Shown here in pieces: positions 58,991 to 61,956 of a stretch of 64,000 bases of DNA (its first letter is position 1; every line of letters starts with the position of its first letter). Location: positions 558,001-622,000 of the forward strand of contig JBBPEB010000009.1 in NCBI GenBank assembly GCA_039096225.1, read 5' to 3'. The notes under the pieces are model-generated. The model made no database searches. It was not told the DNA's origin and saw only the letters and a program-made list of their open reading frames with translations. This stretch comes from Blastocystis sp. Blastoise. Taxonomy: Eukaryota; Protista; Bigyra: Opalinata. The position numbers and the translations under genes are program-made.

Positions 58991-61307
58991 ATGTCAAAGC
59001 CAGATATTGCAGAAGATTGCATTAATCCTGATTTTGATCTCATTGTAATAGGTGGTGGTTCTGGAGGTATGGCATGCTCAAAGGAAGCTGCTGATCTCGG
59101 TGCTAATGTCGCCTTATTTGATTATGTAAAACCATCTCCTCAAGGATCTGTTTGGGGTCTTGGTGGTACTTGTGTAAATGTTGGTTGTATTCCTAAGAAG
59201 CTTATGCACCAAGCTTCTATTATTGGTGAATTCTTAGAAGATGCTAAGACTTTTGGTTGGGATGTACCTAAAGTAAATCATCATTGGAAGACTCTTGTGA
59301 ATAATGTTCAAGATTATATTCGTGGATTAAATTATTCTAGTCGTAGTACTCTTCTTTCTAAGCATGTCACTTATTATAATATGCTTGCTAAAGTTACAGA
59401 TAAATATACTGTTGAGGGTACTGATGTTTTTGGTGAAAAACATACATTTACTGCTCGTCGTATAGTTGTTGCTGTAGGTGGTCGTCCTAATAAATTAGGT
59501 TGTCCTGGTGATGAATATGCTATTTCTTCGGATGATCTTTTTATGTTAAATCATAATCCTGGGAAAACGCTTCTTGTTGGTGCTAGTTTTATTGCTCTTG
59601 AATGTGCTGGTTTCTTACATCATTTAGGGTATATTTTTTGTTGTTGTTGATTTATTTTTATTGTTGTTGTTGTAATTTTATTGTTGTTGTATTTTTATTG
59701 CTGTTGTAATTTTATTGTTATTGTAATTTTTATTGTTATTGTAATTTTTATTGTTATTGTAATTTTATTGTTATTGTAATTTTTATTATTATTGTAATTT
59801 TTTATATAATTATTTGTATATTATAATATGGTTTTATTATTTTCATTATTATTATTATTATTATCTAAATATATATATAGATTTGATGTAACTGTAATGG
59901 TTCGTTCTATTCTTCTTCGTGGTTTTGATCAAGAATGTGCTACTCAAATTGGTGATTTTATGAAAAATCAAGGTGTTCACTTCTTACATGGATATGTTCC
60001 TAGTGAAATATATATTATGTTATTATTATTTTATTATTTTTAATTTTTTTTTTGATTATTATTTTTTTAAAATTAAAAATAATAATAAGTTTTATTATAT
60101 ATAAATAATAAAGAGAGAAGATGGTAGATATTTAGTTAAATATAGTGGTGCTGCTTTAGCTAATGCAGATCTCACAGGAGAAGAAGTTTTTGATACTATT
60201 GTTTCTTGTACTGGTATGTTATTTTTATTGTTATTTGTTTTATTAATATAGTTTTTATTGCCATTATTTGTTTTTATTATTATTATTTTTTCATATTATT
60301 ATTTATTTTTACAATAATAATAATTATAATGATAATAATATATAGGTCGTTATGCTGATGTAGAGAAATTAGGTTTAAAGGAATTAGGTATAAAGATGAG
60401 AAAAGGAAAGATTATGTGTGTTAACGAACAAACTTCTATTCCTAATATATATGCTATTGGTGATGTTCTTTATGGTGGTAAAGAACTTACTCCTGTTGCT
60501 ATTCAAGCATATATATATTATTATTATTATTGTGTTTGTTATATTTATACTTATTATTATTATTTATAGGCTGGTAAATTACTTGCTAGACGTTTATATG
60601 GTAATAGTACTGAACAAATGGATTATAATGGAGTATATATATATGTAATATAATAATATAATATAATAATATATATATATATATATATATATAGGTTCCT
60701 ATGACAGTATTTACACCTCTTGAGTATGGTAATTGTGGTCTTACTGAAGAAGATGCTATTGAACTATATATTATATATTATATTATATTATATCATTATA
60801 TAAATACTATTATGATTAATCAATTTATTTACAAATAACTATATTCTTATTGTATTGAACAACTTGGTGATGATAATGTTGATGTTTATATATCTTATTT
60901 CACTCCTTTAGAATGGAAAATGCCTGAATCTAGAGTTAAAGATAAGTGCTTTGCTAAATTAGTTATAAATAGAAATACAAAAGAAATCATTGGTTTCCAT
61001 ATCTTATCTCCTAATGCTGGTGAAATTACACAAGTATATATAATACATAAATAATAAATAATAAATAATAACTAAATAAATAATAATAATAAATAATAGC
61101 TAAATAAATAATAGCTAAATAAATAAATAATAATAATAATAAATATATATTCTATAGGGTTATGGTTTAGCTATGAAGGCTCATGCTACTTATGATGATC
61201 TTATGAATGTAGTAGGTATTCATCCTACTATAGCTGAAGAATTTACTACTATTTCTACCACGAAACGTAGTGGACTCTCTGCTAAAAAAGGAAGTTGCTG
61301 AGGTTAA
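58991..61307 (+). CDS. TXNRD: High-Mr thioredoxin reductase, selenoprotein (C-terminal GSC-U-G)
   Basis: [37 protein letters not shown]; ends GGA AGT TGC TGA GGT TAA. Confidence 0.96.
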
Positions 61308-61620
61308 TCCCGAGGAATTCGGATAGATCTACTTAAATATAGAGAACTTAATCTATTTATTATATAATACTATTCATACTATATATATATAATAATATTT
61401 ATTTATTTTTTTGAGATTCTTTTAAATTATTCACTTTTTTATAATATTATTTTTTTGTGAATAATAATCTCTTTATATATATTTATATATTTATATTATT
61501 ATAAATTAAATAGATTATTTTACTTTGGTGATTTTATATATACCTCTATATTTATATCTATCCATTTTTATATTCCTTGGGTTACCTTATCCTTTATATA
61601 TATTATTATATGAAAAAGAT

Positions 61621-61686
61621 ATTATTGGTTATAGATGAGAGATTCAACTTAAATGCTTTTATAGCGGAGTTGTTTCTTGAATAATA
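61621..61686 (+). promoter_or_regulatory. SECIS element (type II) in the TrxR 3' UTR
   Basis: ATGA at 61635, 11-bp helix AGATTCAACTT/GAGTTGTTTCT, unpaired AAA at 61651-61653, apical minihelix TGCT/AGCG, 3' TGAA core at 61678, lower helix TTATT/AATAA. Confidence 0.88.
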
Positions 61687-61956
61687 AGACTCTTTTTCAT
61701 TTATTCTTACTTTTTTTATATTTATTAGTTTATATTAGATGTAATTGCTTTCACAATATTACATTTTTTTATATGTTTTGTTATTACATGTATAACTATA
61801 ATTGTTATAATTATAATTAATAAACACAACAATATTGTTAAATACTCATAAACTAGAAAAAAATAACAGAAATTATTAAAAAGAAAATACAAACTATGGA
61901 AAAAGAATTATGTATACATTTGATATGAATATATATAATATATAATAGAAATGAAT

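What the first reader, a model, noticed from the sequence alone, without database searches (positions are those of the whole stretch)
60764..60859. CT-AA intron with no AG at all in thioredoxin reductase
EEDAIE|[10 protein letters not shown] is interrupted by 96 nt that contain an in-frame TAA. There is no AG in the segment or downstream until the conserved PLEW, so no GT-AG solution preserves the protein. An 8-nt direct repeat (TATTGAAC) flanks it and none of the 9 possible registers is canonical. CTATAT...GAA best fits the local donor consensus and the C-A compensatory pair. The repeat could alternatively be a target-site duplication from a recent intron gain.
Basis: partly seen in the sequence, partly recalled or inferred. 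Interest (0 to 1): 0.88.

Follow-up and report, generated by a model that had tools for sequence, protein, structure and literature searches.

The report
Odd-ended intron in Blastocystis thioredoxin reductase
A 96-base AT-rich insert that splits the selenoprotein thioredoxin reductase gene of a tortoise-gut Blastocystis is real, has no GT...AG solution and is most likely an intron with non-standard ends, one of many in this genome, which the public annotation could not model and therefore truncated the protein.

Summary
Window 60764-60859 (96 nt, in-frame TAA at 60836, no AG, 8-nt direct repeat TATTGAAC at both junctions) lies exactly between residues that are adjacent in human TrxR1 (412|413) and in a polyadenylated mRNA of a related Blastocystis. 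No GT-AG or GC-AG pair within 90 nt keeps the frame.

The genome is Blastocystis sp. 'Blastoise' (Russian-tortoise strain Rus-B). Its NCBI model of this gene reads into the insert, stops at the TAA, and so lacks the dimer domain and the Sec codon. Exons 7-8, the UGA and a conserved SECIS are nevertheless intact.

An RNA run holds 0.53 of the gene's 31-mers, against 0.548 expected if fully spliced and 0.603 if the insert is retained.

Best reading is a spliceosomal intron with non-consensus ends. The CT-AA register is the only one that fits the strong local donor core (N-TATATAT). 3' AA ends recur here in TrxR intron 2 (AT-AA), 14-3-3 (GC-AA) and ADSS (GT-AA).

The scan had already noted this class of odd-ended introns elsewhere in the same genome.

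The parts
58991..61307 (+). High-Mr thioredoxin reductase gene (selenoprotein, ends GSCUG-stop), 8 exons and 7 introns. NCBI locus WA158_000592.
   Evidence: Exon-by-exon match to ortholog P0260, 85-90% identical in the exons that align without reading through introns; PDB TrxR1 hits; alignment A2.
60695..60763 (+). Exon 6 ([23 protein letters not shown])
60764..60859 (+). The insert (intron 6) in the CT-AA register, 96 nt; it can be slid from 60757-60852 to 60765-60860 without changing the mRNA.
60757..60764 (+). Left copy of the 8-nt direct repeat TATTGAAC
   Evidence: repeat length 8; chance about 5e-4
60853..60860 (+). Right copy of the 8-nt direct repeat TATTGAAC
60836..60838 (+). In-frame TAA inside the insert; the annotated NCBI protein P0419 ends here.
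60768..60863 (+). Alternative AT-AC reading of the same intron, 96 nt; the junction residues become LF instead of QL.
60844..60851 (+). TTCTTATT, a 6-of-8 match to the U12 branch box TCCTTAAT seen in this genome's clear AT-AC introns. Its A at 60849 is 10, 11 or 14 nt from the three candidate 3' ends.
   Evidence: the U12 snRNA keeps its branch-binding box
60860..61033 (+). Exon 7 ([10 protein letters not shown]...NAGEITQ), dimerisation domain
60008..60104 (+). Intron 2 of the same gene: AT-AA with a 5-nt junction repeat AAATA. It gives [10 protein letters not shown], matching the ortholog's EIIKRADGRY. The NCBI model instead uses GT-AG 60019-60115, which gives EIYIIEDGRY.
61299..61301 (+). 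In-frame TGA (selenocysteine) in GSC-U-G, followed by TAA
   Evidence: homologs end at the Cys before it
61626..61690 (+). SECIS-like hairpin, weak against Rfam but with its core conserved in the relative's mRNA 3' UTR
   Evidence: 18.3 bits, below the gathering score; alignment

Best explanation
The 96 nt are a genuine intron of a working selenoprotein TrxR gene of Blastocystis sp. 'Blastoise'. They are removed precisely from the pre-mRNA, although neither end carries the standard dinucleotide.

The most likely route is the major (U2-type) spliceosome, or a relaxed form of it. The 5' end is found through the lineage's very strong donor core (position +1 variable, then TATATAT), and cleavage occurs before C at 60764. 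The 3' end is an AA rather than an AG, at 60858-60859. AA ends recur in conserved genes of this genome.

Shown:
- The segment interrupts a conserved, otherwise intact gene.
- No standard splice pair exists.
- The CT-AA register alone fits the local donor matrix.
- Other non-GT-AG introns exist in conserved genes here, several of them with long junction repeats.

Inferred:
- RNA lacks the segment.
- The major spliceosome does the removal.
- The register is CT-AA.

The junction repeat suggests the intron arose by an insertion or repair event that duplicated 8 nt of the exon.
For: 1. Exact placement between adjacent residues of human TrxR1, of four other TrxRs and of the poly(A) mRNA contig of a close relative, which reads EEDAIEKLGEDH without a break.

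2. The gene is otherwise intact. All 8 exons are open, the Sec UGA is present, and the 20 nt after it and the SECIS core are conserved with the relative. The only other high-Mr TrxR-like copy found is a 56%-identical paralog; the two remaining matches are far weaker.

3. An RNA run of the same organism holds 0.53 of the sampled 31-mers. The expected share is 0.548 for a fully spliced 8-exon mRNA, 0.603 with the insert retained, and 0.43-0.46 for the truncated annotated model.

4. The donor matrix built from 21 canonical introns scores the CT-AA register +5.9 (canonical range 4.4-14.2). Of the other 15 registers scanned, one scores -2.7 and the rest -5 or lower.

5. Precedents checked here:
- TrxR intron 2, AT-AA; the ortholog supports its exon ends.
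- ADSS, GT-AA.
- 14-3-3, GC-AA and TT-AG.
- Ub-L40, GT-CC.

6. Junction repeats of 8, 6 and 5 nt in three of these non-canonical introns, plus 7 nt in a probable one in the paralog that rests on inference only, against 0-3 nt in 21 canonical introns.
Against: The 31-mer share is therefore the only RNA evidence, and it is about 2.3 standard errors from the retained-insert expectation.

The 3' end in the CT-AA register scores -8.0 on the acceptor matrix, against a canonical range of 6.9-17.3.

U1 snRNA has the standard 5' end, so a C at +1 with A at -1 leaves very little U1 pairing.

A competing AT-AC register exists.

The assembly is R9 nanopore polished with MiSeq reads, so base errors in TA-rich introns cannot be ruled out without reads.

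The examples of other odd introns were picked from earlier flags, not at random. In my less biased sample, about 3 to 5 of 28 introns are odd (7 TrxR, 11 paralog, 10 HSP70 paralog).
Confidence: 0.5

Rival explanations
1. It is a degenerate minor-type (U12-dependent) or hybrid AT-AC intron at 60768-60863. The mRNA would then read ...AIE-LF-GDDN... instead of ...AIE-QL-GDDN..., and the 8-nt repeat would be a relic or a coincidence.
For: - This is the only solution with accepted terminal dinucleotides, and it has the same 96-nt length.
- TTCTTATT at 60844-60851 resembles the TCCTTAAT branch box of this genome's clear AT-AC introns. Its A lies 14 nt from that 3' end, within their 10-15 nt spacing.
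- U11, U12 and U6atac genes are present, and U12 keeps its branch-binding box.
- One TrxR used as a scaffold has AIELFG at this very place (P0034).
- Blastocystis is known to be rich in AT-AC introns (PMC10639083, PMC5608401).
Against: - The donor reads ATATTATAT, whereas the clear U12 introns here have ATATC[CT]TT with C at +5, and U11 keeps the matching AAAGGG box.
- The closest ortholog has KL, nearer to QL than to LF; the alignment score is 346 against 353.
- It leaves an 8-nt junction repeat (chance about 5e-4) unexplained, while similar repeats mark other non-canonical introns that have no AT-AC solution.
Confidence: 0.2
2. It is not an intron. It is a recent 88-nt insertion with an 8-bp target duplication, or a repair scar, that disables this gene copy or one allele. 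The mRNA would then be truncated as in the NCBI model, or made from genome copies that lack the insert.
For: - The 8-nt direct repeat is the geometry of a target-site duplication.
- The insert is absent from the paralog.
- The NCBI model ends at the TAA inside it.
- No junction read was seen.
Against: - The interior matches only (TA)n low complexity elsewhere in the genome, so there is no element family.
- There are no inverted ends and no end-pairing fold.
- The 5' end copies the intron donor core of this genome.
- The 31-mer share of the RNA run fits all eight exons without the insert, and fits the truncated model worse (z about 2 to 3).
- Essential or single-hit genes (Ub-L40, 14-3-3, ADSS) need similar odd removals, so the organism must be able to remove such segments.
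Confidence: 0.1
3. Assembly error: the true sequence has G at 60764 and at 60859 (GT-AG), and the nanopore-based consensus is wrong at both ends.
For: - The assembly was made from R9.4 reads with Guppy 5 and Flye --meta on a xenic culture, polished with MiSeq data.
- Odd ends often sit next to TA repeats.
- For intron 2 and for ADSS, single G-to-A changes would restore GT-AG.
Against: - Two substitutions are needed in one intron, while about 1.5 kb of coding sequence in the same gene has no frameshift or stop.
- The two 'wrong' bases are part of a perfect 8-nt repeat that would be broken by the correction.
- Nanopore residual errors are mostly indels.
- 14-3-3 intron 1 and Ub-L40 cannot be mended by one change.
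Confidence: 0.07
4. It is a separate, non-spliceosomal excision system of the euglenid 'nonconventional intron' kind. In this reading the junction repeats, or a fold that brings the ends together, define the cut sites.
For: - Variable termini and register-ambiguous junction repeats are the hallmarks of euglenid nonconventional introns and of Amoebophrya non-canonical introns (this comparison is from my own knowledge, not from a paper read here).
- Junction repeats are enriched in the odd introns here.
Against: - The segment with its flanks folds no better than shuffles: z = +1.57, and 191 of 200 shuffles fold at least as well.
- The odd introns keep the ordinary donor core in one register, which points to the ordinary machinery.
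- ADSS GT-AA has only a 1-nt repeat.
Confidence: 0.08

Closest known systems
Non-canonical U2-type introns with relaxed terminal nucleotides (for example the diverse non-GT-AG introns of the tunicate Fritillaria borealis; U2-type AT-AC introns of vertebrates)
   Same: Ordinary intron body and donor core, removed precisely, with terminal dinucleotides other than GT-AG. Several classes coexist in one genome.
   Different: CT-AA is not among the classes I know from those systems. Here the 3' end does not resemble the local acceptor at all, and long junction repeats accompany the odd ends. Removal from RNA has not yet been shown.
U12-type AT-AC introns of Blastocystis (346 reported in ST1, PMC5608401; 253, of which 77% AT-AC, in PMC10639083)
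   Same: Same genus. The minor snRNAs are present in this genome. An AT-AC register exists, with a branch-like box at the right distance.
   Different: The donor lacks the ATATC[CT]TT box that this genome's clear minor introns have. The favoured register is not AT-AC.
Introners and transposon-born introns with target-site duplications (PMC9860276)
   Same: A direct repeat spans both junctions, so that removing the element plus one repeat copy restores the old reading frame.
   Different: No multi-copy family, no inverted ends and no GT-AG within the repeat frame. Repeat lengths among the odd introns vary from 1 to 8 nt, which fits microhomology better than one transposase.
Nonconventional introns of euglenids; non-canonical introns of Amoebophrya
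   Same: No fixed termini; boundaries are ambiguous because of short direct repeats.
   Different: No stable end-pairing structure here, and an ordinary donor core is kept.
Published intron classes of Blastocystis (GT-AG, GC-AG about 0.5%, GA-AG about 0.16%, AT-AC; PMC5608401)
   Same: Same genus, and GC-AG is also present in this gene (intron 4).
   Different: CT-AA, AT-AA, GT-AA, TT-AG and GT-CC are not described there, nor in the tortoise-strain genome paper (PMC12129017), whose text does not discuss splice-site types.

Membership tests
Major (U2-type) spliceosomal intron | GT-AG or GC-AG termini | tested here: not met
   None of the 9 equivalent registers qualifies, and no frame-keeping pair exists within 90 nt.
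Major (U2-type) spliceosomal intron | Donor core matching the lineage consensus (G-TATATAT) | tested here: met
   The CT-AA register scores +5.9 on a matrix from 21 canonical introns (range 4.4-14.2). The other 15 registers are all negative (one -2.7, the rest -5 or lower).
Major (U2-type) spliceosomal intron | Acceptor region matching the lineage consensus (TATATAG) | tested here: not met
   Score -8.0 against a canonical range of 6.9-17.3.
Major (U2-type) spliceosomal intron | Removed from mature mRNA | tested here: inconclusive
Minor (U12-type) intron | AT-AC (or GT-AG) termini | tested here: met
   AT-AC at 60768-60863, same length; it changes QL to LF.
Minor (U12-type) intron | 5' box ATATC[CT]TT, pairing with U11 and U6atac | tested here: not met
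   The donor reads ATATTATAT. Clear local examples read ATATCCTTTT and ATATCTTTTA. U11 keeps AAAGGG.
Minor (U12-type) intron | Branch box TCCTTAAY about 10-15 nt before the 3' end | tested here: inconclusive
   TTCTTATT (6 of 8) lies 14 nt before 60863. The chance of such a match is roughly 1% by my own estimate.
Minor (U12-type) intron | Minor snRNAs encoded in the genome | tested here: met
   U12 46.8 bits (below the cut-off, but full length with a conserved branch-binding box), U6atac 63.8 bits, U11 62.9 bits. U4atac was not searched.
Transposon-derived intron (introner) or MITE insertion | Target-site duplication | tested here: met
   8-nt perfect direct repeat; chance about 5e-4.
Transposon-derived intron (introner) or MITE insertion | Many similar copies in the genome | tested here: not met
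   Only (TA)n-type low-complexity matches.
Transposon-derived intron (introner) or MITE insertion | Terminal inverted repeats | tested here: not met
   No end pairing in the fold, z +1.57. Comparing the two ends by eye shows no inverted match.
Euglenid-type nonconventional intron | Stable structure bringing the intron ends together | tested here: not met
Pseudogene | Further disabling changes, or loss of downstream conservation | tested here: not met
   Exons 7-8, the UGA and the SECIS core are intact and conserved with the relative. A very recent insertion cannot be excluded on this ground.

The most novel reading that the evidence does not exclude
Tortoise-gut Blastocystis removes a sizeable share of its introns (perhaps one in ten) without GT-AG. 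These odd introns are young ones, born by insertion or repair events that duplicated a few bases of the exon; this would explain junction repeats of up to 8 nt. They would be spliced by machinery that reads the TATATAT core and tolerates any base at the two terminal positions. Intron 6 of TrxR, CT-AA with an 8-nt repeat, would be the clearest example. The low BUSCO scores of the tortoise strains would then partly reflect gene models broken at such introns.
Probability: 0.3. Interest if true: 0.85.

Novelty: new variant of a known kind. Interest (0 to 1): 0.62.

Why it matters
If transcripts confirm it, this lineage splices introns that break the near-universal GT-AG rule at both ends. That bears on how strictly the terminal G-G contact is needed in the spliceosome, and on how new introns are born, since the junction duplications look like scars of insertion.

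There is also a practical consequence. The public annotation of this genome truncates or mis-splices genes at such introns:
- The TrxR model (413 aa, WA158_000592) lacks its dimerisation domain and its selenocysteine.
- Intron 2 of the same gene is modelled with a wrong in-frame GT-AG.
- The paralog's model carries 14 junk residues.

Gene content, selenoproteome and BUSCO comparisons for the tortoise strains are therefore likely to be understated.

Tried and rejected
- **Read laying.** No read-level evidence could be obtained.
- **Looking for this strain's own spliced transcript or protein.** An exon 1 search, a profile of exon rows plus scaffold proteins and a search with the ortholog's C-terminal half found only the truncated NCBI model and a relative's mRNA. 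The exact look-up of the NCBI model found nothing.
- **One exon-only DNA pattern in JGI metagenomes.** No match.
- **Joined models.** I sent no joined spliced model to any search tool. Joined windows were compared with the ortholog only inside local scripts.
- **Translational bypass** (take-off GAA, landing GAA). Rejected: intron 2 has no matching codons, and the distance is far beyond known cases.
- **Ciliate-type DNA elimination.** Considered early and dropped once the organism was identified.
- **A-to-I editing making AA read as AG.** It could mend AT-AA, GT-AA and GC-AA, but not the C at +1 here, nor TT-AG or GT-CC. No editing enzyme was tested. Kept only as a remote idea.
- **First to last base covariation.** No pattern in the 6 cases.

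Full report
**What is there.** The window is 20-27% GC in most 2-kb bins. It belongs to a 33.34-Mb assembly of 34 contigs.

A paralog's protein is NCBI KAK8805859.1 of 'Blastocystis sp. Blastoise', on a contig whose length equals that of G000:C8. That assembly was made from R9 nanopore reads with Flye and polished with racon, Polypolish and POLCA.

The gene at 58991-61307 is a high-Mr thioredoxin reductase ending GSC-UGA-G-TAA. I placed its eight exons with the close ortholog P0260, which is 85-90% identical in the exons that align without reading through introns, and with a junction scan that ignores splice dinucleotides. The introns are:

| Intron | Ends | Note |
|---|---|---|
| 1 | GT-AG | |
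| 2 | AT-AA | |
| 3 | GT-AG | |
| 4 | GC-AG | |
| 5 | GT-AG | |
| 6 | none standard | the finding |

**The observation.**
- The insert is 96 nt and has an in-frame TAA at 60836.
- It holds no AG, and the next AG is at 60910.
- TATTGAAC sits at both junctions.
- Nine equivalent registers exist, and none is standard.

Exon 6 ends and exon 7 starts at adjacent residues of human TrxR1, of four other TrxRs and of the ortholog. No frame-keeping GT-AG or GC-AG exists within 90 nt.

An 8-nt junction repeat has a chance of about 5e-4. Twenty-one canonical introns from three genes of this genome have 0-3 nt.

**Does it have to be removed?** The ortholog P0260 sits on a 1,755-nt ENA contig with a poly(A) tail, so it is an mRNA. 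It comes from a GC-rich relative and reads EEDAIEKLGEDH without a break.

In our gene, exons 7 and 8 are open. The UGA is in place. The 20 nt after the Cys codon are identical to the relative's, and the SECIS core is shared.

The NCBI model P0419 (WA158_000592, 413 aa) instead runs into the insert and stops at its TAA. That protein would lack the dimerisation domain and the redox-active C-terminus. I take this as a failure of a pipeline built around standard junctions, not as biology.

The only RNA evidence I could get is indirect. Run X1, of the same organism, holds 0.53 of 241 sampled 31-mers of the gene. The expectation is 0.548 for all eight exons fully spliced, 0.603 if the insert is kept, and 0.43-0.46 for the annotated truncated transcript.

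I did not send those letters to any search tool afterwards.

**Which register, which machinery?** A matrix from 21 canonical introns shows an unusually strong donor, G-TATATAT, and acceptor, TATATAG. Among 16 registers only CT-AA (60764-60859) gives a positive donor score, +5.9, which is inside the canonical range. Its acceptor score is poor, -8.0.

U1 snRNA has the standard 5' end. Recognition of such a donor therefore cannot rest on U1 pairing alone.

It has the same length and gives LF instead of QL.
- Its 3' half looks minor-like. TTCTTATT lies 14 nt before the AC, compared with TCCTTAAT 10-15 nt before TAC in two clear AT-AC introns just beyond the window. U11, U12 and U6atac genes exist.
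- Its donor, ATATTATAT, lacks the ATATC[CT]TT box of those introns.
- The closest ortholog has KL at the junction, nearer to QL than to LF.

I rank it second. The two readings predict different mRNA letters, so junction reads would settle it.

**Context in the genome.** I checked several earlier flags myself.
- **TrxR intron 2** is AT-AA with a 5-nt repeat. Its exon ends give [10 protein letters not shown], matching the ortholog's EIIKRADGRY. The annotated GT-AG, 11 nt further on, gives EIYIIEDGRY.
- **14-3-3** has a TT-AG intron and a GC-AA (or CA-AG) intron with a 6-nt repeat.
- **Ub-L40**, the only L40e hit in the genome, has GT-CC.
- **ADSS** has GT-AA.

In each case but one, a single register keeps a good donor score.

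The TrxR paralog has ten clean GT-AG introns. An eleventh is annotated so that 14 junk residues (IYIYIFYYIYFYSY) stay in the protein. The homolog-like reading needs a 106-nt segment removed that has a 7-nt repeat and no GT-AG. That case rests on inference only.

An HSP70 paralog has 8 clean GT-AG introns among 10 scored junctions and two doubtful ones.

Odd ends are therefore a minority, roughly 3-5 of 28 in my less biased sample, but they recur. 3' AA is the commonest oddity, and it occurs with G, A, GC or C at the 5' end.

**Origin.** The interior of the insert matches only (TA)n elsewhere. The segment folds no better than shuffles, so there is no sign of a transposon family or of an end-pairing structure.

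The paralog has no intron at this site. A relative's long open frame (P0265) is unbroken there too, but I did not check whether that sequence is genomic.

The enrichment of junction repeats among the odd introns points to birth by insertion or repair with duplication of a few exon bases. This is an inference.

**What is known.** Published Blastocystis intron classes are GT-AG, GC-AG, GA-AG and AT-AC (PMC5608401; PMC10639083). In the passages I read, the tortoise genome paper reports longer introns but does not discuss splice-site types.

Earlier notes of this scan on other pieces of the same genome had already flagged odd-ended introns and the 'ends copy the exon' pattern. This report adds:
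- the ortholog mRNA;
- the truncated NCBI model;
- the donor-matrix register test;
- the repeat statistics;
- the AT-AC alternative.

**Verdict.** The feature is real. It is most likely a non-canonical intron (about 0.8 that it is removed from RNA). The CT-AA register and the major-type machinery are the best but unproven reading (0.5).

Noticed in passing
window 58991-60838 (NCBI model WA158_000592, P0419): The public protein model is truncated at the TAA inside intron 6. At intron 2 it uses a GT-AG 11 nt off the ortholog-supported junction, giving EIYIIEDGRY instead of [10 protein letters not shown].
   Followed up: yes
L016 1447-1552 (G000:C8, TrxR paralog KAK8805859.1): The annotated protein carries 14 TA-coded junk residues (IYIYIFYYIYFYSY). 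The homolog-like reading GIDY|INSRGSF needs a 106-nt removal with a 7-nt junction repeat TTATATA and no GT-AG.
   Followed up: partly
window 61296-61318 and 61575-61590, versus L017 1505-1527 and about 1555-1570: About 20 nt straddling and following the Sec UGA (TGCTGAGGTTAATCCCGAGG) and a CCTTGGGTTACCT box in the 3' UTR are identical between the 23%-GC tortoise strain and a GC-rich relative. They may be Sec-recoding or UTR elements.
   Followed up: no
L002 1501-1617 (-), U6atac: The box that pairs with the minor 5' splice site reads GAGCCGAGAGA instead of GAAAGGAGAGA, while U11 keeps its AAAGGG box.
   Followed up: no
L037 about 2420-2615 (HSP70 paralog on C7): One junction scores better as GT-AT than as any GT-AG (220 against 199), and another slightly better as TA-TG (261 against 257). 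These are possible further odd introns.
   Followed up: no
whole genome (PMC12129017, Table 1): BUSCO content is 42-43% in the three tortoise strains against 56-61% in the human strains sequenced in the same study. Gene models broken at non-canonical introns could be part of the reason.
   Followed up: no
They lie inside the TA/AAT-rich intron 7.
   Followed up: no
window 59640-59800: Intron 1 of TrxR holds a tandem array of ATTGTTGTTGTAATTTT-like units.
   Followed up: no
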